This document shows, in pieces, positions 15,020-28,859 of a DNA stretch of 64,000 nucleotides. The position numbers and the translations under genes are program-made. The notes beneath the pieces are model-generated. The model was given only the letters and a program-made list of their open reading frames with translations. It made no database searches and was not told the origin of the DNA. The DNA lies in the IMG/VR virus record IMGVR_UViG_3300023184_000026, positions 62,001 to 126,000 of that record, one strand, 5' to 3'. How positions within the stretch are numbered: the first letter of the stretch is position 1; every line of letters begins with the position of its first letter.

Positions 15020-16042
15020 ATGAGTGAACGAAAACTAGCTTCTATACAAACCATACTTTCTTTGAGCCCAATAGTTGGTGCTGATGCAATTTTACTTGCA
15101 AAAGTACTTGGATGGGAACTTGTAGTAAAAAAGACAGAATTTCAAGTCGGGGACCGTTGTGTATATTTTGAAATAGACAGTGTTCTTCCTATCGCACAAT
15201 GGAATGACCATCTAAGAAAAGAGCCAAATAAGCCATTGCGTATAAAAACAATACGTTTGAGAGGCGCATTGAGCCAAGGTTTGGCTATGCCGTTGTCTAT
15301 TATTCCAACTGGGGAATATGAAGTGGGGCAAGATGTAACAACACTTGTTGGTGTCACTAAATACGAACCATTTGTTCCAGCACATCTATCTGGCATGGTC
15401 AAGGGCAATTTTCCCACATTTTTACATAAAACCGATGAACCTCGTTTACAATCTGAACCATACGTTCTTGCTGAAGCCATTGACAAAGGGCTTGTGCTTG
15501 TCGGCACACTCAAAATGGATGGTACAAGCTTTACTGCATACCGACGCGATGATGAGTTTGGTGTTTGTTCTCGCAACCTTGACTTAAAGGAAACAGAAGG
15601 TAATGCTCACTGGAAGATGGCTCGCAAGCTTAAACTTGAAGAAATTCTTCGTAGTGAACCTCGCAATCTTTGCATTCAAGGCGAAATGGTTGGTCCGGGT
15701 ATTCAAGGCAATCGTATGGGATTAAAAGAAGTTGATTTATATCTATTCAACTTATTTGACATTGATACTGGCAAATATGCCGGATACAATGAACTTGTTG
15801 AGTTTGGAAAAAAGCACAATATAAAAGTTGTACCGCTTGTTGCACAGAAAGATTTTGGTTTTGGTGAAACAGCCACCGTAAGTAAAATGCTTGAAGTTGC
15901 TTTGGCTCTAAACTATGACAATGGTACACCCGCCGAAGGCATTGTTTGGCGTTCTGCGTGTGAAACTTACAGCGATGTTCTCAAAGGTAGAATGAGTTTC
16001 AAGACCATCAGCAATCGTTTTCTTGAAAAATATAAAGAATGA
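15020..16042 (+). CDS. RNA ligase, DRB0094/Rnl2-like family
   Basis: RKLASIQ N-terminus, KTDEPR, KMDGTS, QGEMVGPGIQGN, EGIV, SFKTIS. Confidence 0.9.
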   Translation: MSERKLASIQTILSLSPIVGADAILLAKVLGWELVVKKTEFQVGDRCVYFEIDSVLPIAQWNDHLRKEPNKPLRIKTIRLRGALSQGLAMPLSIIPTGEYEVGQDVTTLVGVTKYEPFVPAHLSGMVKGNFPTFLHKTDEPRLQSEPYVLAEAIDKGLVLVGTLKMDGTSFTAYRRDDEFGVCSRNLDLKETEGNAHWKMARKLKLEEILRSEPRNLCIQGEMVGPGIQGNRMGLKEVDLYLFNLFDIDTGKYAGYNELVEFGKKHNIKVVPLVAQKDFGFGETATVSKMLEVALALNYDNGTPAEGIVWRSACETYSDVLKGRMSFKTISNRFLEKYKE

Positions 16043-16124: not shown

Positions 16125-16586
16125 ATGAAACTCGCAACATATATTATATTATTATTGGCACCATTCTGTCATGTTTATGGCAGTGATATGGTGCATAGTT
16201 TCAAGAGTTCTTCTTTCAACGGAGCTAACTTTTCTGCATCTGCGATGACAATTGAAAACTTGGCACGCACTCGTAAACAAACAATAAAAGATATTGCAGC
16301 ATCAAAGGCTGAACAAGCAACAGCACAGGCCCAAAACACACCGTTAAACACGTTTATAAACAATTTGCAGGCAAGAATATACTCACAGCTGGCTTCGCAA
16401 GTTACAGACCAGATATTCAATTCTGGTGGAGCAACATTTGGTATAATAAATCTTCAAGGTGGAGCAACTGTTACATGGCAACGCAATGGCGATTTTGCTA
16501 CACTTTTTATAAACGACCCAGCAAGCGGAAGCACAACTCAAATAACCGTTCCAGTCGGTTCATTGACACCGATACCATCAGGATGA
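16125..16586 (+). CDS. csgF: Curli assembly protein CsgF-like
   Basis: Signal peptide; F.SSSFNG; FINNLQARIYSQL; C-terminal TTQITVP; upstream of csgG. Confidence 0.8.
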   Translation: MKLATYIILLLAPFCHVYGSDMVHSFKSSSFNGANFSASAMTIENLARTRKQTIKDIAASKAEQATAQAQNTPLNTFINNLQARIYSQLASQVTDQIFNSGGATFGIINLQGGATVTWQRNGDFATLFINDPASGSTTQITVPVGSLTPIPSG

Positions 16587-17386
16587 AGAAATATGTTATT
16601 TTTGTTCTTTCATTGTTATTGTTGAGTGGCTGCGGTTCTATTCCTCGCAATCCAGCAATCCTCGACGTTCCAAGAACTCAAACTTCTCCCATGGAGAATG
16701 AATTGTTGTCCATTCCACCCGTTGACGGTCCAAGAATAACCATAGGTGTGTATGGATTTGCAGATAAAACAGGAGCAAGAAAAACCGCAGATAATTATGC
16801 ATCATTTTCTTCCGCCGTGACACAGGGTGCAGAAAGTTGGCTCATTGATGCTTTACGACAATCTGGTCGCGGAGCATGGTTTCAAGTATTAGAACGTGCG
16901 AGTTTGGATAATATAATCAAAGAACGACAACTCATTTCACAAACCAGAGAAACATTCCAAGGAAAAAATTCCGAAAAACTAACACCGATGTTATTTGCAG
17001 GTATTCTTGCCGAAGGTGGAATTATTGGATATGATAGCAACATTTTGACTGGTGGCGCAGGTGCCAGTATATTGGGCATATCAGCAAATACTCAATATCG
17101 CAAAGACGTAGTCACAGTATCATTGCGGTTGGTGAGTGTGCATACGGGAGAAATACTTTTGAGCACTGCCGTAACAAAAACAATTTCCAGTGTAGCAGTG
17201 TCGGGAAACTTATTCAAATTCTATGAACATGGAACATTGTCAATAGAATCTGAATTGGGACTGACCGCAAACGAACCCAATACAATTGCGGTCCGCAGTG
17301 CAATAGAAAAAGCCGTGATAGATATCATTTATCAAGGTGAAAAAATGAACCTCTGGAAGTTCAAGAAACAAAACACAACACCATGA
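16583..17386 (+). CDS. csgG: Curli secretion lipoprotein CsgG-like
   Basis: Lipobox LLSGC; VYGFADKTG, SSAVTQGA, WFQVLER, EGGIIGYD, LRLVSV.TGE. Confidence 0.92.
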   Translation: MKKYVIFVLSLLLLSGCGSIPRNPAILDVPRTQTSPMENELLSIPPVDGPRITIGVYGFADKTGARKTADNYASFSSAVTQGAESWLIDALRQSGRGAWFQVLERASLDNIIKERQLISQTRETFQGKNSEKLTPMLFAGILAEGGIIGYDSNILTGGAGASILGISANTQYRKDVVTVSLRLVSVHTGEILLSTAVTKTISSVAVSGNLFKFYEHGTLSIESELGLTANEPNTIAVRSAIEKAVIDIIYQGEKMNLWKFKKQNTTP

Positions 17387-18243
17387 AAATAATAAACATA
17401 ATAAAGTTTACAATAATCACAGCAGTCTTTGGACTTGCTTCGGCCATATATTCCCAAACGCCAGGTGCTCTTGGTGCAATCGCGGGAAACTCGTCTGGCA
17501 ATCAAATATATGTGAATCAAATCACAACCGGAGGAGACACCACGTTCATACAAAATGGAGCATCCAATAGAATTGGATCTTTTGCTCTTCCAAGCAATAT
17601 TACCGGAGATAACATCTTCATGGAATGGAGACAAATTGGAAACTCAAATAGTACTGATTTCTCTATTACAGGAGCCAACACTACGAAATTGTTGTCTGCC
17701 TTTGCGGGAAACAGCAATGAACAGAGAGTTTATTTCAACGGAGCCAATAACAACATGAATTTCAAATTTGATGGTAACACCAACAGACTTTGGATAAATA
17801 ATGATGTTACTGTGTATCGTGACGGTGGAGAAAATACCGCAACAGACAAAGCAACATTGGCAAGTTCTGATTTACAAATTAAATTTGCAGGCAATAATAA
17901 CTTGTTTGCTTATGCCACAACAAACGGTCTCAATAACTATTTGAAGTATGATGTTACTGGTAATACCAACACTATTAAATCTACACAAATTGGCAGTGCT
18001 GGTACCGGAACTCGTCAATCGGGTCACTATCAAGATGTTACCATTCTCGGCGGAGCAAATGATGTTATGATATATCAACAAGGCACCGTTCAACAATACT
18101 TCCAATACAGTCTTATTGGTAGCAATAACACTGTACGTGTTTCACAAACAGCAACTGCCGCTCCAACATTCACAATCAACAACACCAATCAGCTGGCTCC
18201 TCAAGGTCCGGGCAGCGCAACAACCGTCATAGGCAATCCATAA
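17383..18243 (+). CDS. Curlin-like secreted repeat protein
   Basis: Signal peptide; N/G/Q-rich ~22-24 aa repeats (Q.G..N, F.GN.N). Confidence 0.65.
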   Translation: MKIINIIKFTIITAVFGLASAIYSQTPGALGAIAGNSSGNQIYVNQITTGGDTTFIQNGASNRIGSFALPSNITGDNIFMEWRQIGNSNSTDFSITGANTTKLLSAFAGNSNEQRVYFNGANNNMNFKFDGNTNRLWINNDVTVYRDGGENTATDKATLASSDLQIKFAGNNNLFAYATTNGLNNYLKYDVTGNTNTIKSTQIGSAGTGTRQSGHYQDVTILGGANDVMIYQQGTVQQYFQYSLIGSNNTVRVSQTATAAPTFTINNTNQLAPQGPGSATTVIGNP

Positions 18244-18245
18244 TA

Positions 18246-19433
18246 ATGAACAAAATTGTTACATTATTTTTGATGTTCTTTCTATGGAACAATGTTTATG
18301 GCGTTGTGGGTAAATTGACCGAGGTGACTGGTCCTACACAAGTTAGTAGGGCCAGTACCAAATTGGATGGTAAGATTGATGTGGGTATAGAAATAGATGA
18401 TACCATCGAAACTTTAAAATCGCGTGCTGGTATAACATTTGAAGATGGTACCAGAGTACAATGCACCGAGTTTAGCAAACTGGTTATAGATACGTTTGTG
18501 TATGATCCAAGTAGTGGAAAAGGAAAGCTCGCAATGAAAGCAACAATGGGAACGGTAAGATATGCTTCTGGATTGATTGCTAAAAATAATAAAGAAGAAG
18601 TAAAAGTAAAAACTCCCACGGCATCTATATCAGTACGTGGCACGGATTTTTCAATGACAGTTGATGAATTGGGCAGAAGTTTGGTTATTCTTTTACCATC
18701 CCAGCCACAATTTGGACCTTCCGTTGTTGGTCAGATAACAGTCAGCAATGGACTTGGAACAGTTGTATTGACCAAAGCATATCAGGCTACATTTGTAGCA
18801 TCAAGTTCTGTTGTACCATCTTCTCCAGTACTTTTAAATTTTGACGACGAAAGCAAAGTGAATAATATGTTGTTGATTGATACACCGAAAAATGTCACAC
18901 AAGCTGCAAAAGAAGCAAAGAAAGCATCTGTTGGTTCAGAAAAAGAAGATGATGGTGGTGAAGATAAAAATAAAAAGATGGAAAAGAAAGAAACAAAGTC
19001 CGAGAGTAAATCTGCTGCTACATCAGTCTCACAAGTTGAAGAAATTTCAACCGAATCTGCAACCGAAGCAACAAACTTACCTATCGTCGTGGTTCAAGAA
19101 AACATTGTCACAAAGCTTGATATAACTGCTATAAGTCCAAGCACCAATATTGCTGTTATGGATGCAATTGCAGAAAAACAATCTGTGCAACCAACATCAA
19201 TATCAATTATACCAATAGCACCAATTATATCTATACCAACTTCCACAGTAAATAATGGCTTTACAACGAACGGAACTCATGCTATATTGTATATAACCAA
19301 TGGAAATAATGTGGTTTGGTATACTCTAAAGGCTGATGCCAATGCTATATTCAATATAACTCAAAACACTGAATCAAAGGAATATCCATTGAATTTTGGT
19401 TCCAAACTTAAAGTTAATATAATTCAAAAATGA
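18246..19433 (+). CDS. FecR-domain protein
   Basis: Signal peptide; ITFEDGT, GTVRYASG, KTPTASISVRGTDF. Confidence 0.85.
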   Translation: MNKIVTLFLMFFLWNNVYGVVGKLTEVTGPTQVSRASTKLDGKIDVGIEIDDTIETLKSRAGITFEDGTRVQCTEFSKLVIDTFVYDPSSGKGKLAMKATMGTVRYASGLIAKNNKEEVKVKTPTASISVRGTDFSMTVDELGRSLVILLPSQPQFGPSVVGQITVSNGLGTVVLTKAYQATFVASSSVVPSSPVLLNFDDESKVNNMLLIDTPKNVTQAAKEAKKASVGSEKEDDGGEDKNKKMEKKETKSESKSAATSVSQVEEISTESATEATNLPIVVVQENIVTKLDITAISPSTNIAVMDAIAEKQSVQPTSISIIPIAPIISIPTSTVNNGFTTNGTHAILYITNGNNVVWYTLKADANAIFNITQNTESKEYPLNFGSKLKVNIIQK

Positions 19434-21205
19434 AATCTCATATTATTAAACTATTTGGCGTCGGTTTGCTGATATTAACCGCACTTGTTGTGCTACGCAT
19501 ACAAGATTCATATCCAATAGAAGTAATGCGGCTCAAGGGATTGGACTATTATCAACGCACGCAAGACAAAGTAAAAAGTGAAAATATCATTATTGTTGAA
19601 ATCGACGAAAAAAGTTTAGAAGAAAAAGGACAATGGCCGTGGCCAAGAAATGAACTGGCAGATGGTATAAAGAAGGCGTTTGAAAATGAAGCAGCCACTG
19701 TAGTATTGCCAATTATATTTGCAGAAAAAGATAGAATGGGTGGAGACGCAGTATTTGTGGAAATACTGGGAAAATCGCCTGTAATAACCGCACAATCTGC
19801 GGCGGTAAAGGGCAAAGGCGTGCCAGTACCAAGAGGTATGGCGACGATTGGCGGCAGTGCAGATGGATGGTTATATGATTATCCAAATGCAATCGGACCG
19901 ATAAAAGAAATAGGTGAATCGTCTGCTGGTGTGGGAATGTTATTGACGGCACCTGAACTTGATGGCGTGGTACGTCGCTTGCCGTTGGTTGTACAAGTAA
20001 AAAAAGAAACATATCCAACTTTACCTTTGGAAGTGTTGAGAGTGTTTGGAAATGAACCGAGCTATCAAGCAAAAATCAATGAAGCGGGCGTGCAAGCCAT
20101 AAGAGTAAAAGGCTCGGCCCCAATAAATACAGATGCTAGTGGTAGAGTATGGATAAACTTTAAATACAAGTTTGATAATATTTCATATACAGATAAAGAT
20201 TGGAGCAAAGTAAAGGGCAAGATTGTGGTTATAGCATTAACTGCTGAAGGATTAACAAACACAGTGGCAACTCCCGTAGGAACAGCATATGGACACGAAG
20301 TTAGTATGCAGACACTACAAATGTTGGTTGATGGAAATAGACTGGAACGCAAAGCGGAGTTTGATTTGTATGAGTTGGCAGTTGGAACATTGCTTGGATT
20401 GATTCTTGTAACATCCGCCGCATATCTTGGCTATGTTTATAATGGAATATTGGTAAAAGTGTCTGTGTCTGGGTGTATGTTTTTTGGATTTTATTTGTTC
20501 AAAAAGCATGGCTATTTGATTGATTATACTTGGCCGATTGTGGCAGCATTTTTACCGTGGGTTGGTGCAATATTTATGAGATTTGTGATGGAGTTCAAAT
20601 TGAAGATGCAAATCAAGAAGCAGTTTGGAACATATCTTTCTCCAGCACTGGTTGAAAAACTACAAAAAAATCCGGGCTTGCTCAAACTTGGTGGCGAATC
20701 CAAAGAACTAACTATATTATTTTCCGATATAAGAGGATATACTGCGTTGTCTGAGCATTTTGGGAAAGATGTGCAGGGGCTAACATCTCTCATTAACCGT
20801 TATATGGATGTTATGTTGCCTATAGTAATGAAAAATGAAGGCACTGTTGGAAAACTTATAGGGGACGCTGTAATGGCGTGGTGGTCGGCACCTATTCATG
20901 TAAAAGACCAAGCAACACTTGCAATAAAAGCCGCGCAGGAAATGAATATCGCATTGGTAAAACTCAACGAAGAATCAAAAGCACAAGGAATCCCAACTCT
21001 ATCAATCGGAATCGGAATAAATACAGGAGAAGTTGTTGTGGGAAATATGGGGTCAACGGAGCGATTTAGTTATGATATACTTGGTGACGCAGTGAATCTA
21101 GCGTCTCGCATAGAGGGTCAAACTAAAGAATATGGCGTGTTGATTATTTTGGGAGAAAATACTGTAAAAAAATACAAAAAAGAACAAGAAAATATGAAAA
21201 AATGA
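19430..21205 (+). CDS. CHASE2 + class III adenylate/guanylate cyclase, N-terminal part
   Basis: GQWPWPR, DGVVRR (CHASE2); TM helices; LFSDIRGYT, KLIGDAVM, GINTG, GDAVNLASRIEG. Confidence 0.92.
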   Translation: MKSHIIKLFGVGLLILTALVVLRIQDSYPIEVMRLKGLDYYQRTQDKVKSENIIIVEIDEKSLEEKGQWPWPRNELADGIKKAFENEAATVVLPIIFAEKDRMGGDAVFVEILGKSPVITAQSAAVKGKGVPVPRGMATIGGSADGWLYDYPNAIGPIKEIGESSAGVGMLLTAPELDGVVRRLPLVVQVKKETYPTLPLEVLRVFGNEPSYQAKINEAGVQAIRVKGSAPINTDASGRVWINFKYKFDNISYTDKDWSKVKGKIVVIALTAEGLTNTVATPVGTAYGHEVSMQTLQMLVDGNRLERKAEFDLYELAVGTLLGLILVTSAAYLGYVYNGILVKVSVSGCMFFGFYLFKKHGYLIDYTWPIVAAFLPWVGAIFMRFVMEFKLKMQIKKQFGTYLSPALVEKLQKNPGLLKLGGESKELTILFSDIRGYTALSEHFGKDVQGLTSLINRYMDVMLPIVMKNEGTVGKLIGDAVMAWWSAPIHVKDQATLAIKAAQEMNIALVKLNEESKAQGIPTLSIGIGINTGEVVVGNMGSTERFSYDILGDAVNLASRIEGQTKEYGVLIILGENTVKKYKKEQENMKK

Positions 21206-22005
21206 TAAGCGATATGCTATATATTGGAGATACACAAATAATTTTAAACATGAGAAAAATAACAAACGGTGAAGCCGTGGAAAGAATATCAAAAAAACAT
21301 CCACATTTGGATTGCTCGCAGGTTAAATACAATGGAGCATTTGAAAAAATTGTGGTGAGATGTACTATTCACGATCACACATTTGAAACTCCATACAAAT
21401 ACATTGTTAGTAAGCGAAGCAAGACCGGTTGTATATATTGCCAACGAGACTCTTACAGATTAAATAACGAAACCGTCATTTTCCGTTTCATAAAGACACA
21501 TGGTAAAAAATATGATTACAATAAAGTGCAATATAAAAGTAATTTGAAAAAAGTTGAAATAGTATGTCCAAAACATGGAAGTTTCATGCAGGAACCAGCA
21601 AACCATTGGAACGGACACGGGTGCATGCGATGTGCTGTGGAGAATGGTCGTCACGGAGTTGGTGGATACACCGAAGAAACTCTGAAAGAAAGCAATGAAA
21701 CTGGCGTCGTGTATGTGCTGAAAATAAAAGACTGCAAAATTTACTACAAAATAGGAATATCAAAATTTGGCGGAGACAAAAGAATAAAAGACATATCTTA
21801 TTCCGATAAAGCCGAAGTTTTATATGAGTCAAAAAGAATATTGCTAAAAGACGCATTCAGAATTGAACAAGAAATGCTATCTCAGCATAACCGATATAGG
21901 CATTCCCATAAGAAAATATCCGGATGGACGGAGATAATAGACGAACGACCAAATATCAAATTGTTAGAAAAAAAGATAAACTCCATAAACTATGCAACTA
22001 TTTGA
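21202..22005 (+). mobile_element. Free-standing homing-endonuclease-like gene (Zn-finger repeats + GIY-YIG-like C-terminus) inserted in cyclase gene
   Basis: C.IH...GCIYC and CPKHGSF...H.NGHGC..C repeats; VYVL...YYKIGIS...IEQ; likely start at ATG 21250. Confidence 0.75.
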
Positions 22006-22297
22006 ACTTGATTGTATCGCCGTCAAAGGTAAAAAAGATGGCGCGAGAATTTATACCGTTCTTGAAAATAAATTGAGTGAAAACCAATATAACACAGTTG
22101 TATCTGGTCATTTTGCTTTTCTAAATGATTACAGAATGCAAAGATGGGATGGTGCAATATCTCATGCCAATGAACTCATGACGCAGAATAAAGAAATGAA
22201 GAAGTATTATGAAATGATGATTGAAAGAATATTGGAACTTCGTAACAGCAATCTTGACAAAGATTGGGACGGAGTTTTTAGAGCAACCTCCAAGTAA
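21992..22297 (+). CDS. C-terminal fragment of the CHASE2 cyclase
   Basis: ELDCIAVKGK...IYTV and WDGVFRATSK, the usual C-terminal continuation of CHASE2 cyclases. Confidence 0.85.
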   Translation: MQLFELDCIAVKGKKDGARIYTVLENKLSENQYNTVVSGHFAFLNDYRMQRWDGAISHANELMTQNKEMKKYYEMMIERILELRNSNLDKDWDGVFRATSK

Positions 22298-22319
22298 AAT
22301 TTTATTATAAAACATAATT

Positions 22320-22763
22320 ATGAAATATATGAAAACAAAACTACTATTAGCAATACTTCCGTTGGTGCTATTAACTTCATGTGCCAACTCTCAAGGCGAT
22401 GTGTTTGGACGCAAAGCAGATGCTGGTGCCATTATTGGTGGCATGGCTGGAACCGTGATTGGTGCTTACAACGGCAATGCTATCAAGGGTGCATTGATTG
22501 GTGCTGGCGTTGGGTTGGGTGCTGGTGCCATTGCAGATGCTAATGATGCTCGCCAAACTCAAAATGGACCAATGATATATCGCGAACAGCCTGTTCAACA
22601 AACAGAAGTTGTTGTGGTTCAACAACCAATTGTGATAGAAGAGCGTGTATGGGTCGGTCCAGACCTATGGGTATACTCATATCATGGCTATAGGCACAAT
22701 GGCAGAATATATTATCGTGGACCCCACGTACCATTTCATCGTCGCCCTGCTTTTAGACGCTAA
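22320..22763 (+). CDS. Glycine-zipper lipoprotein
   Basis: Lipobox LLTSC; GAIIGGMAG..IG...GALIGAGVG. Confidence 0.75.
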   Translation: MKYMKTKLLLAILPLVLLTSCANSQGDVFGRKADAGAIIGGMAGTVIGAYNGNAIKGALIGAGVGLGAGAIADANDARQTQNGPMIYREQPVQQTEVVVVQQPIVIEERVWVGPDLWVYSYHGYRHNGRIYYRGPHVPFHRRPAFRR

Positions 22764-22818
22764 AAAGTAGTTATAATAAGATATTTGCAAAAAATATCAC
22801 TTTTTTAGAAAAAAGTGT

Positions 22819-22847
22819 TTGACTTTTCATTTTTTCTTCATCATAGT
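22819..22847 (+). promoter_or_regulatory. Sigma70-like promoter of leader peptide
   Basis: TTGACT-17 bp-CATAGT. Confidence 0.65.
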
Positions 22848-22867
22848 TCTATTTATCAATAACAAAC

Positions 22868-22981
22868 ATGAACTCGTATTCACACAAATCCCAAAACCTC
22901 GCCACTTCGTGGAGTTTGTGCTTTATTACACAACCTACACGTGGAGCCAATAAAGGCGATACAAAGCAGGGTGTGGCATAA
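22868..22981 (+). CDS. Putative attenuator leader peptide (37 aa)
   Basis: MNSYSHKSQNLATSWSLCFITQPTRGANKGDTKQGVA*, between promoter and terminator. Confidence 0.6.
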   Translation: MNSYSHKSQNLATSWSLCFITQPTRGANKGDTKQGVA

Positions 22982-23019
22982 TAGGAGTTAAAGTTTAATA
23001 ACTTTACAAAACCTAAAAA

Positions 23020-23049
23020 GCCCACCCTCCAAAAGAGAGTGGGTTTTTT
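23020..23049 (+). terminator. Attenuator terminator
   Basis: GCCCACCCTC-CAAAA-GAGAGTGGGT followed by T-tract; 5' arm can alternatively pair with 22968-22977. Confidence 0.7.
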
Positions 23050-23086
23050 GTTTTTGGAGTTTTTAGAAAAAGGTTAGAAAAAAAGA

Positions 23087-23150
23087 TTGACAAAATAAAA
23101 AAAGTAAGTAGAGTAAGAAGTATCAAATTTAAGTTAGGTTCTTTTAACAA
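23087..23150 (+). promoter_or_regulatory. Second promoter plus boxA-like site
   Basis: TTGACA-16-TAGAGT; GTTCTTTTAACAA at 23138-23150. Confidence 0.5.
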
Positions 23151-23498
23151 TTCAAATTTTTAGGTTAGGTTAGATGGGTAAAAACGCACCTGTAAGCGCG
23201 ATAAAATAGCCACCGGACCATTTAGGTACCGTTTTGTGGGAATCAATATCATTATGTAGGTTAGAGATAGGTTAGATGAAAACATAATGTGAGGCCGAAG
23301 TATATAATGTTATTTATAAAGTTGAAGAAAGAAGCAACAAGACATGTATTTAGCGTGTTGAGTTTCTTTCTTCATATGTTCTGCGTAATATACAACCTCC
23401 TCGTGGTGCAGAACGGGACAAAATAAAAAAATATTTTGTGCGAATAGTATAGTTAAAAGAGTTTTTATAGATATTTATTACTAACATTCAAAAAAAAT

Positions 23499-23816
23499 AT
23501 GGAAGATAAAGATATACTCGTTGAGTTTTTAAGAGGCGGATGGATTGTTGCTCTAATTGGAGCACTGGGTATGTTGGCAAGAACTTTCATGGATGGTGTA
23601 AAACGGTCTTGCACAGAACAAATCAAACGAATCATAGCAGCAGCAATATGTTCAACAATAGCATGGTTTATTTTAGAACAAGTAGAAGTAAGTAGCTTAA
23701 CAAAAGCAATCAGTTATGGCATAACTGGTGTGATAAGTCCGGAAATTCTTCAAGGTATAACAGTATTATCAAAGAAGTTTGCTAAAAAACCAGAAGATTT
23801 CTTAAAGAAAAAATAA
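23499..23816 (+). CDS. Small membrane protein (holin-like)
   Basis: 105 aa, three hydrophobic segments, basic C-terminus. Confidence 0.55.
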   Translation: MEDKDILVEFLRGGWIVALIGALGMLARTFMDGVKRSCTEQIKRIIAAAICSTIAWFILEQVEVSSLTKAISYGITGVISPEILQGITVLSKKFAKKPEDFLKKK

Positions 23817-23821: not shown

Positions 23822-23897
23822 GCGGTAGTATCTCAGTTGGTAGAGAACGAGTTTTCCAAACTTGATGTCGCAGGTTCGATCCCTGTCTGCCGCTCCA
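23822..23897 (+). tRNA. tRNA-Gly(TCC)
   Basis: Cloverleaf, loop TTTCCAA, encoded CCA. Confidence 0.93.
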
Positions 23898-23954
23898 TTT
23901 GCAAACGCCACGTCATTGGCGAAATTGAGGTTGACTCAAATGACAATTTTAAAT

Positions 23955-24041
23955 GGGCAAGCGCCAAAGTTGGAGAGTTGGAGCAGACTGTAAATCTGTT
24001 GCCGTAAGGCTGAGTTGGTTCGAATCCGACCTTGCCCACCA
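23955..24041 (+). tRNA. tRNA-Tyr(GTA)
   Basis: Loop CTGTAAA, long variable arm, CCA. Confidence 0.93.
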
Positions 24042-24052
24042 TTTTAGAATAC

Positions 24053-24140
24053 GGAAAATTGGCAGAGTGGTCTAACGCAGGACTTTGCTAAAGTCCCGAT
24101 CCGAAAGGGTCCATAGGTTCGAATCCTATATTTTCCGCCA
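24053..24140 (+). tRNA. tRNA-Ser(GCT)
   Basis: Loop TTGCTAA, long variable arm, G73, CCA. Confidence 0.93.
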
Positions 24141-24151
24141 AATTTATATAC

Positions 24152-24226
24152 GCCGAATAAACATAAATGGTAATGTGCTAGTCTTGTAAATTAGATAAGC
24201 GGGTTCGATTCCCGCATTTGGCTCCA
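24152..24226 (+). tRNA. tRNA-Thr(TGT)
   Basis: Loop CTTGTAA, CCA. Confidence 0.88.
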
Positions 24227-24234
24227 CTTTATAT

Positions 24235-24310
24235 GCAGTAGTAGTTCAATGGTAGAATGCTTCGTTGCCAACGAAGAGGTCTGCGGGTTCAAGTCCCGCC
24301 TACTGCACCA
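24235..24310 (+). tRNA. tRNA-Gly(GCC)
   Basis: Loop TTGCCAA, CCA. Confidence 0.9.
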
Positions 24311-24320
24311 ATTTTTAAAT

Positions 24321-24396
24321 GCCGCGTGACATAGCTGGTTGTGATGACCCCTCTGCAAAAGGGAGGAGATTGGTTCGATTCCAATACGCGGTTCCA
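24321..24396 (+). tRNA. tRNA-Cys(GCA)
   Basis: Loop CTGCAAA, U73, CCA. Confidence 0.88.
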
Positions 24397-24399
24397 TTT

Positions 24400-24503
24400 T
24401 GTTGTGTAGCTCAGAGGTAGACCACTGACGGGATATGATGGTAAAAGACACCGAAAAAGTTCCCTATAAGCAGATGCCGATGGTTCGAATCCATCCATAA
24501 CAA
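24400..24503 (+). ncRNA. tRNA-like RNA with expanded anticodon arm
   Basis: Acceptor TGTTGTG/CATAACA, D arm, T arm GATGG-TTCGAAT-CCATC; extended insert replaces anticodon loop; no CCA. Confidence 0.6.
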
Positions 24504-24513
24504 ATAATTTTAT

Positions 24514-24591
24514 GGGCGTGTGACGTAACTGGATAACCGTGTTTCATTCAAAATGAAAATTCTGTGGGTTCGAGTCCCATCATGCCCACCA
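24514..24591 (+). tRNA. tRNA-Leu(CAA), short variable loop
   Basis: Stem TTTCA/TGAAA, loop TTCAAAA, 5-nt variable loop, A73, CCA. Confidence 0.75.
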
Positions 24592-24723
24592 ATTTTGATA
24601 GTGTATGTGTTTTCGTCTCTAAAATCTTACGGCACATGGAAGACGTGTAACGGGTTCAAAGTCCGACCACTTTGCATTGAGTAGAGTGAGTAAGCCAACC
24701 ATATACATTATCAAAATATTTTT

Positions 24724-24797
24724 GGACGATTGGTGAAAAAGTATCACTGCTGACTGAAGATCAATAATTCCGGTTGCAAGATCCGGGTCGTCCACCA
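24724..24797 (+). tRNA. tRNA-Phe(GAA), atypical T arm
   Basis: Loop CTGAAGA, acceptor GGACGAT/GTCGTCC, CCA. Confidence 0.75.
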
Positions 24798-24798
24798 T

Positions 24799-25128
24799 TT
24801 ATTTAAAATCAAATTCTTTTTTATATTCTAACACTGATGTTATATATGGGACGCTACCATCATCCTCGAATTGTCTGTATGTAAAATCTATTATAAAGTT
24901 TCCAACTTGAACAACTGTGTGTGGTAGTTTGTAAACTATATGTTTAACATCTACGGTCTTTGCTTGTGGAAATCCATTATTATTTAAGAAATCTGCCAGT
25001 GAATCTGATATTTCACAACACATTCCTTTTGACCACGTTGGTGCATGAATAATATTATAATAATCCTCCCCATCGGACTGTAACCAAGAAGTGCAAAGTT
25101 CATTTAAAAGTATTTCTGTTAGTTTCAT
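24799..25128 (-). CDS. Hypothetical protein
   Basis: 109-aa ORF, N-terminus MKLTEILLNE; GMC...H...D motif order suggests a papain/transglutaminase-like fold (inference). Confidence 0.6.
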   Translation of the reverse strand: MKLTEILLNELCTSWLQSDGEDYYNIIHAPTWSKGMCCEISDSLADFLNNNGFPQAKTVDVKHIVYKLPHTVVQVGNFIIDFTYRQFEDDGSVPYITSVLEYKKEFDFK

Positions 25129-25223
25129 AACATATACATATCCTAAATGTTATTTAATATCAAAAAGAAATATTTGAAAGTATCGGCGGCAATACATTTA
25201 AACTACCCGAAACACCATTTTAT

Positions 25224-25297
25224 TGAGATATATTGTAGTGGCAGCAAAAGAGTCTCTGAAACTCATAGCATTGGTTCGATTCCAATTATCTCATCCA
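25224..25297 (+). tRNA. tRNA-Gln(CTG)
   Basis: U1-A72, loop CTCTGAA, CCA. Confidence 0.85.
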
Positions 25298-25462
25298 TTT
25301 TATTATACAACAACTGCGGAGATAGTAATTCCAAAAAAGTTGTTACTGTATGAGTAGAAGATATCGTGAGTTAATTACTATGTCACGTGAAGCGAAAAAT
25401 ATAGGATAATATAAAGGTGAAGCCTCATCTTGAATGGGTTAAATTCCCAAAGGCATTTTTAC

Positions 25463-25538
25463 TGTCCCATAGCTCAGTTGGCAGAGCAAGAAACTGTTAA
25501 TTTCAAGGTCGCACGTTCGAGCCGTGCTGGGACAGCCA
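25463..25538 (+). tRNA. tRNA-Asn(GTT)
   Basis: Loop CTGTTAA, G73, CCA. Confidence 0.92.
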
Positions 25539-25544
25539 ATTTAT

Positions 25545-25617
25545 TGTGATGTAGTGTCAAAGTAGCACGGGCTCTGTTAAAGCTCTTGTCGTGGTGCGAG
25601 TCCACGCTTCACAGCCA
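25545..25617 (+). tRNA. tRNA-Asn(GTT), divergent second copy
   Basis: Loop CTGTTAA, T loop TGCGAGT, G73, CCA. Confidence 0.8.
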
Positions 25618-25623
25618 TTTTAC

Positions 25624-25698
25624 GGATCGCAAGCATATAAAGTGATGCTCTAGGCTCTTAACCTTGAGAACACGGGGCAGTACCGTGGCGGTCCACCA
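25624..25698 (+). tRNA. tRNA-Lys(CTT)
   Basis: Loop CTCTTAA, atypical T loop GGCAGTA, CCA. Confidence 0.8.
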
Positions 25699-25791
25699 AT
25701 TTCAAGCAAGAAGAGGCTGTTAAAGTCAGCATGGACATTACAAGATGCTAAATGGTGATAAGTGAATTCACATCTTACTTGAAAAATTTAT

Positions 25792-25870
25792 GGAACTAAA
25801 GCCACAGTGGACGGGCAGCGGTCTTTTAAACCGTTAATTCGTGTGGGTTCAACTCCCACTGGTTCCACCA
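25792..25870 (+). tRNA. tRNA-Lys(TTT)
   Basis: Loop CTTTTAA, CCA. Confidence 0.88.
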
Positions 25871-25876
25871 TTTTAT

Positions 25877-25959
25877 AGCAGAGACAAGCCAAGGGACGCT
25901 AACTGCGCTCATAACGCAGCCGAAAGGTATGATGTGTTCGATTCACATCTCTGCTTCCA
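25877..25959 (+). tRNA. tRNA with CAT anticodon and long variable arm
   Basis: CTGCG-CTCATAA-CGCAG; variable arm CCGAAAGG; acceptor AGCAGAG/CTCTGCT; CCA. Confidence 0.7.
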
Positions 25960-25966
25960 TTTTTAT

Positions 25967-26042
25967 CAGTGTGTGGTGCCAAAGGTTGGCGATTCCGCTT
26001 GGAACGGAAATTATGTAGGTTCGAGTCCTATCACACTGACCA
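25967..26042 (+). tRNA. tRNA-Pro(TGG)
   Basis: C1-G72, loop CTTGGAA, CCA. Confidence 0.87.
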
Positions 26043-26047
26043 TTTAT

Positions 26048-26124
26048 GCTTGTGTAGCTCAACTGGATAGAGCAACAGATTACGAATCTGTAGGTTGAAG
26101 GCTCGAATCCTTCCACATGCACCA
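26048..26124 (+). tRNA. tRNA-Arg(ACG)
   Basis: Loop TTACGAA, CCA. Confidence 0.9.
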
Positions 26125-26127
26125 TTT

Positions 26128-26224
26128 TGAACAGAAGCCTAGTTGTTCGTAAAACAGGAGTCGGTGTAATCATATTGATGTTTTTCAACAGGTAACCGTG
26201 CGCGGAATAATCGGGTGCTGTTCA
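26128..26224 (+). ncRNA. 97-nt structured element, copy 1
   Basis: Closed by TGAACAG/CTGTTCA; 3 differences from copy at 27079. Confidence 0.65.
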
Positions 26225-26230
26225 TTTTTT

Positions 26231-26305
26231 GGCCCTATAGAATAGAAGTTAGTTCGCCTGACTTTCAATCAGGAGATGTGGGAGCGTTACCCACTGGGGC
26301 TACCA
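26231..26305 (+). tRNA. tRNA-Glu(TTC)
   Basis: Loop CTTTCAA, atypical T loop AGCGTTA, CCA. Confidence 0.85.
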
Positions 26306-26308
26306 TTT

Positions 26309-26464
26309 TTGAGCGGCAGCGTGGAAGGACATGCAGCCTTGAGAAGTTCTATTACGCGCAGTATAGTGTACATAAAGCTGTGCCTCTGAAACGAAGCGAT
26401 GACTACCTAATAGATCGGGTCAGATTCAATGTCATCAATAGGTATCAATTCCTATCCGACTCAA
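26309..26464 (+). ncRNA. tRNA-like RNA with large central insert
   Basis: TTGAGCGG/CCGACTCAA ends, D-like GCGTGGAAGGACATGC, T-like ATAGG-TATCAATT-CCTAT. Confidence 0.5.
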
Positions 26465-26731
26465 ATTAATTTTGAATAGCAGCTCGGAGTGTAGGAAAGT
26501 TTTTTCCTTTCCGGTACGAGCATGGGGTCTAACCATCAGCGGAAAAATAAGCAACGAAAAGCCTCTGGGTTCATAACAATATGTTAAATGGAAAAATAAT
26601 AACATGTTGGAATTTATGCGTAAATAAGAAACTCGCTATAGTGTAGCTATATAAAGCAAAACTACACCTATTCAATTAATTTTATGAGTTATAATAAAGT
26701 TTTGATATAATATATATAGTATATATTATAT

Positions 26732-26974
26732 ATGAACATATCACCAATACAATCATCGGCTGAAACAAATAGTTCACCAGTAAACATTCAAGCTGCGGCT
26801 AAAATATATAGTAAAAATAGTCCAGTATCACTTAGTACAAATGCATCTGGATTTTTTGCAAATGCTGAAGCTGATGTTGTGCATGATCTTAAAAAAGCTT
26901 TGATGGCTGCAATAAATTGTGGAGATTTTGACAAAGCTATACATATTTTAAAATGTTTAAAAGAACTGGGATAA
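26732..26974 (+). CDS. Hypothetical protein
   Basis: 80-aa ATG ORF in tRNA array. Confidence 0.55.
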   Translation: MNISPIQSSAETNSSPVNIQAAAKIYSKNSPVSLSTNASGFFANAEADVVHDLKKALMAAINCGDFDKAIHILKCLKELG

Positions 26975-27078
26975 TAATATATAAACAATTTACAGAGAGT
27001 TAAGGGCACTGCTACCAGAATATCGTGGTAGGTTCACGTAGCGTAATAACCACACATGGCTAAACACTCTCTAATATT

Positions 27079-27175
27079 TGAACAGAAGTCTAGTTGTTTG
27101 TAAAACAGGAGTCGGTGTAATCATATTGATGTTTTTCAACAGGCAACCGTGCGCGGAATAATCGGGTGCTGTTCA
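27079..27175 (+). ncRNA. 97-nt structured element, copy 2
   Basis: Near-identical direct repeat of 26128-26224. Confidence 0.65.
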
Positions 27176-27179
27176 TTTT

Positions 27180-27253
27180 TGGGATATGGTGTAATGGTAA
27201 CACAGACGACTTTGACTCGTCTATTCATGGTTCGAGTCCATGTATCCCAGCCA
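27180..27253 (+). tRNA. tRNA-Gln(TTG)
   Basis: U1-A72, loop CTTTGAC, G73, CCA. Confidence 0.92.
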
Positions 27254-27314
27254 TTATATAGTTGATGGGTTATATATACTCTTCATTTTTGTGTATTAGT
27301 ATATTTATAAAAGT

Positions 27315-27515
27315 ATGAGCGACATGACATCAAATAATTTGATTATACGCAGAATGATTGATAAGAAAACATCTTATACAGCAATCTTTTTGAAAGGAGA
27401 ACGACCAAGAATTTTTCCTACAGATGATTATGAACATGCTCGTATTTTACAAATATACAAGCAAGATAGAAAATATGAAGGTATAATAAACGATTTTAAT
27501 GATTTTGATTTGTAA
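27315..27515 (+). CDS. Hypothetical protein
   Basis: 66-aa ORF preceded by TATTTATA motif. Confidence 0.55.
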   Translation: MSDMTSNNLIIRRMIDKKTSYTAIFLKGERPRIFPTDDYEHARILQIYKQDRKYEGIINDFNDFDL

Positions 27516-27518
27516 TAT

Positions 27519-27596
27519 GGTAGAGAAGCACAAGTAGTTATATGCTCTCGTTTGATAGACGAAGGATAGTGAGTGCAAGTCTCACCTCTACCACCA
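27519..27596 (+). tRNA. tRNA-Ile(GAT)
   Basis: Loop TTGATAG, T loop TGCAAGT, CCA. Confidence 0.8.
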
Positions 27597-27811
27597 TATA
27601 GCCCGAATCATCCCTCTCTTATGTAAAAATAATGATGGACTCAATCTGAAACTACAGATGATGACACATGACGATGTGTCTAGGGCAATCTTTTATATAT
27701 GCGAATTTTAATTACGGCGAATCTGCCATAATTAAACAAAGGAAAAAAAGAATCAATAACACTTGACATTTTGTTAGAAAATATTAGAGTTTTGATAGAT
27801 AGATATTTTAT

Positions 27812-27887
27812 GGGCTAGTATCTCAGTTGGTAGAGAAGCTGCTTTGCAAGCAGAAGGTCGCAGGTTCGATCCCTGTCTGGTCCACCA
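27812..27887 (+). tRNA. tRNA-Ala(TGC)
   Basis: G3:U70, loop TTTGCAA, CCA. Confidence 0.93.
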
Positions 27888-27893
27888 TTTTAT

Positions 27894-27969
27894 ACCGAGT
27901 TAGCACAGTGGCTAATGCACTTCGTTTACATCGAAGCTATCAGGGGTTCGAGTCCCTTACTCGGTACCA
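27894..27969 (+). tRNA. tRNA-Val(TAC)
   Basis: Loop TTTACAT, CCA. Confidence 0.9.
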
Positions 27970-27997
27970 TTTCAATTGTTCTATATACTTATAGTAT

Positions 27998-28390
27998 ATG
28001 ATTAAATTAAAAGATTTATTGCCAGAATCACCATTTGCAGTGTTTGTTTTAGCCAAAGCAAATGATGGATATGCAGCCACAACTCGTGCAGCAGACCGAA
28101 ATGAACAAGGAAAAATTGGATTGCCCGGCGGAAAAGTTGATATTGGTGAATCACCAGTTCAAGCAGCAACAAGAGAATCTAATGAAGAAGGATGGCAAGT
28201 TGATATAACAAATACAACACCTATTCATAAACAATTAGTTGATGGAAAAATGGTATATTGGTATGCAGGAGAAAATGCAGTAAAGTTAAATAATTTTAAA
28301 GAAAAAGGTAGAATAACTCCCATAGTTGCAACTATTGAACAAATTTTATCTTCTGGTTACGGAAATGAAAATCTAAAACACTTAGTATAA
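27998..28390 (+). CDS. NUDIX hydrolase
   Basis: Nudix box LPGGKVDIGESPVQAATRESNEEG. Confidence 0.9.
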   Translation: MIKLKDLLPESPFAVFVLAKANDGYAATTRAADRNEQGKIGLPGGKVDIGESPVQAATRESNEEGWQVDITNTTPIHKQLVDGKMVYWYAGENAVKLNNFKEKGRITPIVATIEQILSSGYGNENLKHLV

Positions 28391-28634
28391 CAAGTGCTTG
28401 AAACGTGTTCGTTCATATGCTTTCGTGAAAGTATATCAACAGAAGCAGTGTATTGGTTCAATCGTTAGTTCTTTTGCGTAAAAAGACATTTTTAGCATAC
28501 GGAGGGTAGCCCCTTGGTGGTGACGATATACCTTATCACGTCAATTATTTATATGCTTGACACATAACAAATATTGTTCATTATGACGTGAGAAATGAGA
28601 TGCAATAATGCAAATCATTTCATACACACACAAA

Positions 28635-28859
28635 ATGAAAGATACAAATACACAAAAGACGGGTAAAAATGGTTATGAAATTAGATTGGAAATTCTTGGA
28701 CTAGCAATGGGACAAGCAGACTCAGCTTATTTCAACCAACTTGAGCGACTTCGCCATGTTGCGGGTGATAAAGGAACATGGGAATTGCCAAAAGATAATC
28801 GTGTAGATGAAGCAATGCAAATTGCTGAAAAACTCTACAAGTTTGTTGAGAATAAGTAA
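28635..28859 (+). CDS. Hypothetical protein
   Basis: NGYEIRLEIL...AEKLYKFV small ORF. Confidence 0.6.
   Translation: MKDTNTQKTGKNGYEIRLEILGLAMGQADSAYFNQLERLRHVAGDKGTWELPKDNRVDEAMQIAEKLYKFVENK

What the first reader, a model, noticed from the sequence alone, without database searches (positions are those of the whole stretch)
21150..22297. Cyclase gene split in two by an intron-less homing endonuclease
Seen: cyclase homology stops after ...GVLIILGENT with a short K/E-rich tail; the next expected motifs (ELD.IAVKGK...WDGVF.ATSK) restart at a new ATG (21992) overlapping the end of the nuclease gene. Under 50 nt of non-coding space leaves no room for a group I/II intron core. Established: phage Aeh1 nrdA is split by mobE yet works as two polypeptides. 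Inference: the class III catalytic domain, including its KGK motif, reassembles in trans.
Basis: partly seen in the sequence, partly recalled or inferred. Interest (0 to 1): 0.7.

Follow-up and report, generated by a model that had tools for sequence, protein, structure and literature searches.

The report
Phage cyclase gene split by nuclease
In a 297-kb freshwater phage, a selfish nuclease gene sits in the middle of a sensor adenylate cyclase gene and cuts it into two separately translated pieces with no sign of splicing, and relatives show that this nuclease-plus-cyclase-core block moves between phages.

Summary
The window lies in a 297,258-bp virus record. Its CHASE2 class III cyclase gene is in two ORFs, 19430-21205 (591 aa) and 21992-22297 (101 aa). 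A 267-aa endonuclease ORF (DUF723 zinc fingers plus T5orf172) lies between them at 21202-22005 and overlaps both.

Uninterrupted alleles at 95-98% identity show that 798 nt (21194-21991) replace 9 nt, and that 591 + 101 = 692 aa. The K/E-rich "tail" and the second piece's ATG are therefore native sequence, not new.

Splicing is unsupported. There is no intron match and no non-coding space, the nuclease is in another frame, and two RNA-library contigs cross the nuclease/C-piece junction.

The break falls in a loop before the strand-KGK-strand element. A complex model docks the pieces: score 0.85, best control 0.01.

All 77 IMG/VR relatives are uninterrupted. Other assemblies carry the same split with the nuclease, with a nuclease remnant, or with none.

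The nuclease travels with about 0.5 kb of divergent cyclase core. That block is near-identical (dS 0.01-0.02) across backbones that differ at dS about 1, which is the pattern homing with co-conversion would leave.

Activity of the two-piece enzyme is inferred, not shown. This is a new member of the known "genes in pieces" kind (Aeh1 nrdA/mobE).

The parts
16125..17386 (+). Context: CsgF-like (16125-16586) and CsgG-like (16475-17386) genes that open the envelope/signalling module
   Evidence: Pfam CsgF 2.8e-13 and CsgG 3.3e-50. The same gene order is seen in related contigs and in the cultured phages HTVC008M and Melnitz.
18246..19433 (+). Context: FecR-domain protein whose stop overlaps the cyclase start
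   Evidence: Pfam FecR 9.9e-10. ORF coordinates.
19430..21205 (+). Cyclase N fragment, 591 aa. It holds the CHASE2 sensor, membrane segments and most of the class III catalytic domain: the metal Asp residues in FSD and IGDA, the specificity pair Lys...Asp, and the Asn and Arg of VNLASR.
   Evidence: Pfam CHASE2 and Guanylate_cyc profile positions 6-146 of 183. Aligned with intact alleles. Residue roles are assigned by alignment to solved cyclases and established class III motifs.
20698..21193 (+). Mosaic patch, the 'type A' catalytic core. It is 54-72% identical to the near-isogenic uninterrupted phage L093, which is 96-100% identical on both sides. It is found in every split allele.
   Evidence: Sliding identity and breakpoint alignments. 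The same boundaries appear in a second backbone and comparable ones in a third lineage. Its tree is incongruent with the CHASE2 tree.
21194..21991 (+). Inserted DNA: 798 nt in place of 9 nt (GCTAAAACT) of the uninterrupted allele, a net gain of 789 nt or 263 codons. It supplies the N fragment's last three codons and its stop.
   Evidence: Junction comparison with L002, L003 and L045.
21202..22005 (+). Free-standing homing-type endonuclease gene, 267 aa. It has N-terminal DUF723 / treble-clef zinc-finger repeats and a C-terminal T5orf172 domain of the GIY-YIG superfamily. Its stop codon lies in native cyclase sequence (TTTGAA). A conserved internal Met (MRKITN, ATG at 21250) is the start in the most distant orthologues.
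   Evidence: It is the only copy in the genome. Orthologues at 59-88% identity sit at the same site, with dN/dS 0.065-0.115. The family is described in PMC10448857.
21992..22297 (+). Cyclase C fragment, 101 aa. It holds the last strands of the catalytic domain (LFELD, IAVKGK, RIYTVLE), then a three-helix bundle and the conserved WDGVFRATSK end.
   Evidence: Aligned with intact alleles. AF2 model of the intact allele. Complex model. A TAA lies two codons upstream in this frame, so 21992 is the first possible start.
22320..22763 (+). Context: glycine-zipper lipoprotein that closes the module
   Evidence: Pfam Gly-zipper families, 3e-05 to 6e-05, below their gathering scores. The same neighbour is seen in relatives.

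Best explanation
A free-standing homing endonuclease gene of the DUF723 zinc-finger plus T5orf172/GIY-YIG type has inserted into a surface loop of the class III catalytic domain of a phage CHASE2 adenylate cyclase.

The gene is now expressed as two polypeptides from one tightly coupled ORF string. The N fragment's stop overlaps the endonuclease start, and the endonuclease's end overlaps the C fragment's native Met. Nothing is spliced.

The 101-aa C fragment supplies the last beta strands and the KGK phosphate-binding motif. It completes the fold of the N fragment by ordinary fragment complementation, without insertion-derived tails, and so restores a membrane-bound cyclase (inferred).

The endonuclease spreads by cutting endonuclease-free alleles in co-infections. 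Repair copies it together with about 0.5 kb of the donor's catalytic core. Its homing role is inferred from these comparisons; cleavage was not tested.

After invasion the endonuclease can be deleted while the gene stays in two pieces.
For: SHOWN
- ORF layout and overlaps.
- Exact insertion of 798 nt for 9 nt, and 591 + 101 = 692 aa, the length of the 98%-identical uninterrupted P0001.
- No Rfam intron among the matches listed at E up to 10.
- The endonuclease is in a different frame from both cyclase pieces.
- RNA-library contigs from two samples run uninterrupted across 21992, and no N-to-C joint was seen.
- The same site is split in L079, L089, L090 and L092 with orthologous endonucleases. 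In L081 only the endonuclease tail remains. In L080 a 19-nt footprint remains. In L087 and L094 no endonuclease remains and the two ORFs overlap at ATGA.
- Every C fragment is a full ORF with all motifs.
- Endonuclease dN/dS is 0.065-0.115 at dS above 1.
- Type-A core dN/dS is 0.00-0.04 between split alleles over dS 0.3-3.6.
- Mosaic block with shared breakpoints in three backbones. Core dS is 0.01-0.02 against CHASE2 dS 0.8-1.2.
- The core type changes at least 9 times on the CHASE2 tree.

MODELLED
- The split falls at residues 197|198 of the model, in the loop between helix 182-192 and strand 200-207. Mean pLDDT is 87.
- Complex score is 0.85 against 0.01 for the best of 3 controls. That mark was reached by 51 of 78 solved complexes and 2 of 108 mismatched pairs. 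The three runs agree in 100% of contacts, and the partner's pLDDT is at least 86. Strand 568-576 pairs with C-fragment residues 18-23 and 3-7.

CONTEXT
- The genome does not use Shine-Dalgarno sites: 3 of 42 long ORFs have one, which is the background rate. The C fragment's A-rich leader is therefore normal here.
Against: - No enzymatic or protein evidence exists.
- In the window phage the event is recent. Its C fragment differs at 3 codons from the uninterrupted L093, so its intactness says nothing about selection.
- The cassette recombines among backbones. Much of the low dN/dS of C fragments could therefore have accrued in unsplit ancestors.
- The complex model may simply recall the known cyclase fold.
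- All 77 IMG/VR relatives are uninterrupted, so the split form is a minority there.
- The RNA evidence is thin: depth 2-5, and DNA carry-over cannot be excluded.
- The T5orf172 match sits at the Pfam cut-off, and the endonuclease model was too poor for a fold match.
Confidence: 0.72

Rival explanations
1. The insertion killed the cyclase. The two pieces are a young pseudogene kept only because the endonuclease spreads faster than selection removes it, and the phage does without the enzyme.
For: The window's event is recent: 3 codon differences from the intact L093. The cassette shows sweep-like spread, with core dS 0.01-0.02 across diverged backbones, so drive could outrun selection. One relative, L096, carries a plain nonsense codon, so loss is at least sometimes tolerated.
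Against: None of 11 split loci and none of 13 stand-alone C-fragment protein clusters is truncated or frameshifted. Alleles that lost the endonuclease, and so have no drive, are about as common as those that keep it, judged by tail type. The type-A catalytic core, found in 34 split against 4 intact clusters, has dN/dS 0.00-0.04 over dS up to above 2. C-fragment starts stay coupled to the upstream ORF in every allele.
Confidence: 0.17
2. The interruption is removed by RNA splicing (a group I or II intron whose core overlaps the ORF) or by protein splicing (an intein), giving a one-piece cyclase.
For: The N and C fragments are in the same frame and the net insert is a multiple of three. Endonuclease genes are often housed in introns and inteins (PMC2988022).
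Against: Rfam at a permissive threshold finds no intron family in 20500-22800. The insert is filled end to end by the ORF. The endonuclease is read in another frame with a stop before it, and no Hint/intein domain was found. Relatives keep the split with only a 19-nt spacer or with an overlap, which cannot be an intron. RNA-library contigs cross the 3' junction unspliced.
Confidence: 0.03
3. The pieces do not reassemble. The N fragment acts alone, for example as a CHASE2 sensor or as a dominant-negative partner of a host cyclase, and the C fragment's helical bundle has a separate role.
For: The C fragment is mostly a three-helix bundle outside the cyclase fold. Conservation alone cannot tell joint use from separate use.
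Against: The catalytic residues of the N fragment stay under very strong constraint. The C fragment's first 25 residues are integral strands of the same sheet, are the most conserved part (ELD.IAVKGK), and dock there in the model.
Confidence: 0.06
4. A full-length protein is made by programmed frameshifting or ribosomal bypass across the break, as in T4 gene 60.
For: In the endonuclease-free alleles L087, L094 and L080 the two ORFs are only -4 to +19 nt apart and lie in A-rich sequence.
Against: The window's gap is 786 nt. No X XXY YYZ slippery site lies at the L087 or L094 junctions, and no matched take-off and landing codons with a hairpin were evident by reading the sequence. No dedicated search was run.
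Confidence: 0.02

Closest known systems
Aeromonas phage Aeh1 nrdA-a / mobE / nrdA-b ('genes in pieces'; PMC3045599, PMC2988022)
   Same: A free-standing endonuclease gene sits inside a coding sequence. The host gene becomes two ORFs, nothing is spliced, and the active site must be rebuilt from two polypeptides.
   Different: mobE is an HNH enzyme, whereas this one is DUF723 plus T5orf172 (GIY-YIG superfamily). In Aeh1 the insertion created terminal tails that are essential for assembly. Here only three residues differ from the intact allele, and the C piece starts at a native Met, so no new tails exist. The break here lies inside one compact domain of about 190 aa. Activity is shown for Aeh1 and is not shown here.
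Split gene 43 of Aeromonas phages 25 (with a seg-type endonuclease) and 44RR (split by an untranslated spacer, no endonuclease), and T4 genes 39/60 with mobA (PMC2988022)
   Same: Related phages carry the same split with or without an endonuclease gene. This parallels the window, L079 and L089 (with) against L080, L087 and L094 (without).
   Different: Here, footprints in L080 (19 nt of the endonuclease's 3' end) and L081 (its last ~20 codons) show directly that these two endonuclease-free split alleles descend from endonuclease-bearing ones.
T5orf172 homing endonucleases with CapR/DUF723/DUF4397 zinc-finger modules in ICP1-like vibriophages (PMC10448857)
   Same: Same domain make-up, and the same position at the edge of a recombination block between related phages.
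   Different: Those described are free-standing between genes. This one lies inside a gene and splits it. Sequence identity to cultured-phage members is at most about 34%.
CHASE2 adenylate/guanylate cyclase of the curli-like module of cultured Kyanoviridae phages: Pelagibacter phage HTVC008M and Methylophilales phage Melnitz
   Same: Same gene (41-43% identity over 93-97% of the N fragment) and the same neighbours, CsgG and, in Melnitz, an annotated FecR-domain protein.
   Different: Those genes are uninterrupted, and their genomes are about 141-147 kb against 297 kb here.

Membership tests
Class III nucleotidyl cyclase (Pfam PF00211) | Sequence match to the catalytic domain over its full length | tested here: met
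   The feature is met only by the two pieces together. The N fragment covers profile positions 6-146 of 183. A profile of intact relatives matches solved cyclases (6fht 1.9e-47, CyaB 3r5g 1.1e-43) through the KGK...IYTVLE part that the C fragment carries.
Class III nucleotidyl cyclase (Pfam PF00211) | Catalytic residues: two metal-binding Asp, a Lys plus Asp/Thr specificity pair, Asn and Arg for the transition state, and a phosphate-binding Lys in KGK | tested here: met
   FSD, GKLIGDA, YDILGDAVNLASR in the N fragment and AVKGKK in the C fragment. Roles are assigned by alignment and established motif knowledge. The Lys...Asp pair predicts ATP as substrate.
Class III nucleotidyl cyclase (Pfam PF00211) | Cyclase fold | tested here: met
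   AF2 model of the intact allele's residues 395-692 has pLDDT 87. Foldseek top hits are 6fht, 3r5g and 1wc1, E 4e-16 to 5e-15, with target TM up to 0.88.
Class III nucleotidyl cyclase (Pfam PF00211) | cAMP synthesis | not testable with these tools
   This needs an enzyme assay or complementation of a cya mutant.
Homing endonuclease, T5orf172 branch of the GIY-YIG superfamily | Nuclease domain with the motifs | tested here: inconclusive
   T5orf172 scores 20.0 bits at a cut-off of 20 and 22.4 bits. The orthologue P0194 carries PF10544 and PF13455 in precomputed Pfam. PHROG 681 'endonuclease' matches at 3.4e-37. The VYVL...YYKIG...R...E(Q)E pattern is invariant in five orthologues. The AF2 model was poor (pLDDT 65) and Foldseek found nothing.
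Homing endonuclease, T5orf172 branch of the GIY-YIG superfamily | DNA-binding module typical of the family (CapR/DUF723/DUF4397 zinc fingers) | tested here: met
   DUF723 matches at 4.9e-07, above its cut-off. A second treble-clef repeat (DUF4379) matches below its cut-off. The Cys/His columns are invariant. The family description is in PMC10448857.
Homing endonuclease, T5orf172 branch of the GIY-YIG superfamily | Presence/absence polymorphism at one site among close relatives, with co-conversion of flanks | tested here: met
   The endonuclease is absent from L093, L002, L003 and L045 at 95-100% flank identity. The mosaic block is bounded at the insertion site in three backbones.
Homing endonuclease, T5orf172 branch of the GIY-YIG superfamily | Site-specific cleavage of the endonuclease-free allele | not testable with these tools
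   This needs purified protein and target DNA. The cleavage site is unknown.
Group I or group II intron | Conserved ribozyme core flanking or overlapping the ORF | tested here: not met
   No intron family was found in 20500-22800 at E up to 10. Non-coding space is zero. Endonuclease-free split alleles have spacers of -14 to +19 nt.
Intein | In-frame insertion with Hint splicing blocks | tested here: not met
   A stop codon ends the N fragment, the endonuclease is read in another frame, and no Hint domain appears in Pfam.
Genes in pieces (endonuclease-fragmented gene that retains function) | Two separate ORFs that together equal the uninterrupted protein | tested here: met
   591 + 101 = 692 aa, the length of P0001, with collinear alignment.
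Genes in pieces (endonuclease-fragmented gene that retains function) | The fragments assemble into an active enzyme | tested here: inconclusive
   Only a model is available: score 0.85 against a best control of 0.01, a mark reached by 51 of 78 solved complexes and 2 of 108 mismatched pairs, with 100% run agreement and partner pLDDT at least 86. There is also no decay in split alleles. No assay was possible.

The most novel reading that the evidence does not exclude
The endonuclease and the adjacent 0.5-kb catalytic core act as one mobile cassette. The cassette sweeps through a whole clade of lake phages and overwrites the resident cyclase core (Lys...Thr type) with its own (Lys...Asp type plus a longer linker). 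It leaves behind a cyclase that is permanently in two subunits even after the endonuclease itself is lost. That would be a natural, repeatedly sampled route from a one-chain enzyme to a two-chain enzyme, driven by a selfish gene.
Probability: 0.4. Interest if true: 0.75.

Novelty: new member of a known kind. Interest (0 to 1): 0.6.

Why it matters
Endonuclease-fragmented genes that still work are known from only a handful of phage genes (nrdA, gene 43, topoisomerase). This finding would add a signalling enzyme, broken inside a single small catalytic domain and without insertion-derived assembly tails.

It also comes with a natural series of every stage, sampled in many lakes: uninterrupted, invaded, endonuclease decaying, and endonuclease gone but still split. 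That series makes two questions directly testable. How much fragmentation can a compact fold tolerate? How does homing reshape flanking coding sequence?

It further shows a T5orf172-type endonuclease apparently driving recent exchange between phages whose flanking sequence differs at dS about 1.

Tried and rejected
- An Rfam scan for introns found nothing.
- Promoter and terminator scans gave counts at background level.
- The endonuclease's AF2 model had pLDDT 65, and its Foldseek search returned only noise. A phmmer search of the endonuclease against PDB gave only chance ribosomal-protein hits. NCBIfam added nothing.
- Scans of IMG/VR and JGI contigs with endonuclease peptide patterns found only the window's own contig and distant zinc-finger relatives.
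- I first took dN/dS 0.05-0.09 between C fragments of L090, L092 and L080 as proof of selection in the split state. I withdrew that. Their cores are nearly identical (dS 0.01-0.02) while their flanks differ at dS 0.4-1.6, so the split block arrived recently and those C fragments diverged mostly before it.
- Comparing each split allele with its nearest intact allele gives pN/pS 0.07-0.37. All are below neutrality, but this cannot separate time spent split from time spent intact.
- P0025 looked like a second split site. It is a single in-frame TAG.
- Frameshifting or bypass at the endonuclease-free junctions was considered and rejected by eye, for lack of a slippery site.
Full report
**What is there.** The window is bases 62001-126000 of a 297,258-bp virus record that CheckV rates complete. 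The source contig is Ga0214919_10000013 from lake water.

On the + strand an ORF string runs without gaps:
- CsgF-like and CsgG-like genes, 16125-17386
- an unknown 286-aa ORF
- a FecR-domain protein, 18246-19433
- the cyclase N fragment, 19430-21205 (591 aa)
- an endonuclease ORF, 21202-22005 (267 aa)
- the cyclase C fragment, 21992-22297 (101 aa)
- a glycine-zipper lipoprotein, 22320-22763

The N fragment matches CHASE2 (8.6e-42) and positions 6-146 of the 183-position Guanylate_cyc profile. The middle ORF matches DUF723 (4.9e-07), T5orf172 at its cut-off, and PHROG 681 'endonuclease' at 3.4e-37. It is the only such gene in the genome.

**The exact lesion.** Three IMG/VR contigs at 95-96% identity (L002, L003, L045) and protein P0001 at 98% carry the gene uninterrupted. 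They read ...GENT(V/I)KKYKKEQENAKTMQLFELDCIAVKGKK.

Against them, window bases 21194-21991 (798 nt) replace 9 nt, a net gain of 263 codons. The N fragment's last three codons and its stop come from the insert. The endonuclease's stop (22003-22005) lies in native cyclase sequence. The C fragment begins at the native Met codon, with a TAA two codons upstream in that frame.

Since 591 + 101 = 692 aa, the length of P0001, nothing is lost. The K/E-rich 'tail' is therefore a native helix, not a by-product of insertion. Unlike Aeh1 NrdA (PMC3045599), no new terminal tails were created.

**No splicing.**
- A permissive Rfam scan of 20500-22800 finds no intron family.
- There is no non-coding space.
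- The endonuclease is read in a different frame behind a stop codon, and no intein domain is present.
- Relatives keep the same split with a 19-nt spacer or with overlapping ORFs, which cannot house an intron.
- Two metatranscriptome libraries each contain a contig that runs straight across the endonuclease/C-fragment junction (21706-22032 and 21836-22037). No contig joins N to C.

The RNA evidence is thin. Depth is 2-5 and DNA carry-over cannot be excluded, although coverage of the region is patchy in a way that even DNA coverage in the same study is not.

**Where the break falls in the fold.** An AF2 model of the intact allele's residues 395-692 (pLDDT 87) is a class III cyclase domain. Its best structural matches are 6fht, P. 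aeruginosa CyaB (3r5g) and Spirulina CyaC (1wc1). A three-helix bundle follows the domain.

The break lies between model residues 197 and 198, in the loop between helix 182-192 and strand 200-207. The N fragment keeps both metal Asp residues, the Lys...Asp specificity pair, and the Asn and Arg. The C fragment brings two integral strands and the KGK motif.

A complex model of N residues 395-591 with the C fragment scored 0.85 against 0.01 for the best of three controls. That mark was reached by 51 of 78 solved complexes and 2 of 108 mismatched pairs. The three runs agreed in 100% of contacts, and the partner's pLDDT was at least 86. Strand 568-576 pairs with C-fragment residues 18-23 and 3-7. 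This shows the pieces are compatible with the known fold. It does not show that they bind.

**Relatives: every stage of an endonuclease life cycle at one site.** All 77 related IMG/VR loci are uninterrupted. So is the homologue in the cultured Kyanoviridae phages HTVC008M and Melnitz, which share the CsgG-cyclase neighbourhood (Melnitz with an annotated FecR gene).

Other assemblies hold split alleles at the same codon position:
- L079, L089, L090 and L092 carry orthologous endonucleases at 88%, 80% and about 60% identity.
- L081 has the endonuclease body deleted, with its last ~20 codons fused to the N fragment.
- L080 has the endonuclease deleted, leaving 19 nt of its 3' end.
- L087, L088, L094 and L095 have no endonuclease, and N and C overlap at ATGA in different frames.

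Among the 117 nearest N-type protein clusters, 34 are split, 4 are intact with the same core type, and 76 have the other core type. Judged by their tails, about half of the split clusters lack the endonuclease. That count is an inference from tail identity to the loci I examined.

In every split allele the C-fragment start lies within -26 to +19 nt of the end of the upstream ORF, which fits translational coupling. The genome does not use Shine-Dalgarno sites: 3 of 42 long ORFs have one, equal to background.

**A mobile cassette.** Phage L093 is 96-100% identical to the window from 17100 to 20697 and from 22000 to 23500. It is only 54-72% identical across 20698-21193, and it lacks the endonuclease.

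The same two breakpoints recur when L089, L094 and L087 are compared with L021 and L023. The left one follows the conserved ...KLGG segment that opens the catalytic domain. The right one lies at TTTGAACTTGAT, just past the insertion.

In a third lineage, the core plus endonuclease of L092 is 98-100% identical to L090, and its core is 93-100% identical to L080. Their CHASE2 parts are about 55-97% and 42-93% identical in 60-nt windows, mostly 60-90%. Core dS is 0.01-0.02 against 0.8-1.2 for CHASE2 and 0.35-1.6 for the C fragment.

On a CHASE2 tree the core type changes 15 times, at least 9 of them forced by well-supported branches. Core subtypes do not follow backbones.

This is the pattern expected from homing with co-conversion of the donor's flank (PMC2988022), and it matches the finding that T5orf172 nuclease genes sit at boundaries of exchange (PMC10448857).

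The converted tract lies only upstream. Two explanations are possible, and the data cannot choose between them. The cut site may lie upstream in the core. Alternatively, the roughly 57% identity between the two core types may force resolution at the next homologous islands.

The two core types differ at the second specificity residue (Asp against Thr) and in linker length.

**Is the two-piece enzyme used?**

Evidence for:
- No split locus or stand-alone C-fragment cluster is truncated.
- The endonuclease itself is under strong constraint, with dN/dS 0.065-0.115.
- The type-A catalytic core occurs mostly in split alleles and has dN/dS 0.00-0.04 over dS 0.3-3.6 between split alleles.
- Endonuclease-free split alleles, which have no drive, are common.

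Evidence against over-reading this:
- The window's own event is recent, with 3 codon differences from L093.
- Because the cassette sweeps across backbones, low dN/dS between C fragments (0.05-0.23; baseline for intact alleles 0.19) largely reflects history before the split.
- Four intact type-A alleles exist and could act as a reservoir.

I therefore put about 0.7 on functional reassembly and about 0.17 on a drive-maintained pseudogene.

**Comparison and novelty.** The closest described case is Aeh1 nrdA/mobE. The split gene 43 of phages 25 and 44RR parallels the with-and-without-endonuclease pairs.

The differences here are:
- the endonuclease family
- the host gene, a signalling cyclase
- a break inside one compact domain
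- no insertion-derived tails
- direct footprints showing that endonuclease-free split alleles descend from invaded ones

My literature searches turned up no report of a split cyclase or of this cassette. I file it as a new member of a known kind, of solid interest to people who work on mobile elements and phage evolution.

This cyclase is a class III signalling enzyme of a phage of lake bacteria, not a toxin. I used only natural uninterrupted alleles for comparison and never joined the pieces.

Noticed in passing
window 23822-38280 and 45795-46185: Thirty tRNA genes sit in a loose array just downstream of the module. They include tRNA-Ile(tat) and tRNA-Asn(att). A tmRNA gene with tag peptide AKRNLAKVSFLSVRKNSGAETLVAA lies further on.
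   Followed up: no
window 16125-22763; L097 (HTVC008M) and L098 (Melnitz): The module CsgF-CsgG-unknown-FecR-CHASE2 cyclase-glycine-zipper lipoprotein is conserved across more than 80 related contigs. In part it is also conserved in cultured T4-like phages of Pelagibacter and Methylophilales. What a phage does with a curli-type secretion channel plus a sensor cyclase is unexplained.
   Followed up: partly
window 22300-22700 against L002: A second mosaic patch. The glycine-zipper gene is only 52-59% identical to L002, inside a background that is 93-100% identical, and no endonuclease gene lies at this patch in the window.
   Followed up: no
L096:4740-5070: One relative with the other (type B) core carries a single in-frame TAG in the last catalytic strand (RI*TVLE). 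It is a plain nonsense allele, seen on one contig.
   Followed up: yes
window 17605-18331: In two metatranscriptome libraries the unknown 286-aa ORF upstream of FecR has the deepest contigs of the region (depth 18.6 and 7.9, against 2-5 elsewhere and none over most of the N fragment).
   Followed up: no
whole window: Only 3 of 42 ORFs of 200 aa or more have a Shine-Dalgarno-like 4-mer upstream, which equals the background rate. Starts sit in A/T-rich leaders, and GC content is 37%.
   Followed up: partly
window 15020-16042: An RNA ligase gene with a PHA02142 OB-fold domain lies just upstream of the module.
   Followed up: no
L079 against the window and L092: The endonuclease and the core are not always co-inherited. 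L079 has a core of the L092 subtype (92% identity) but an endonuclease of the window subtype (88%, against about 60% to L092's). Recombination therefore also occurs between core and endonuclease.
   Followed up: partly
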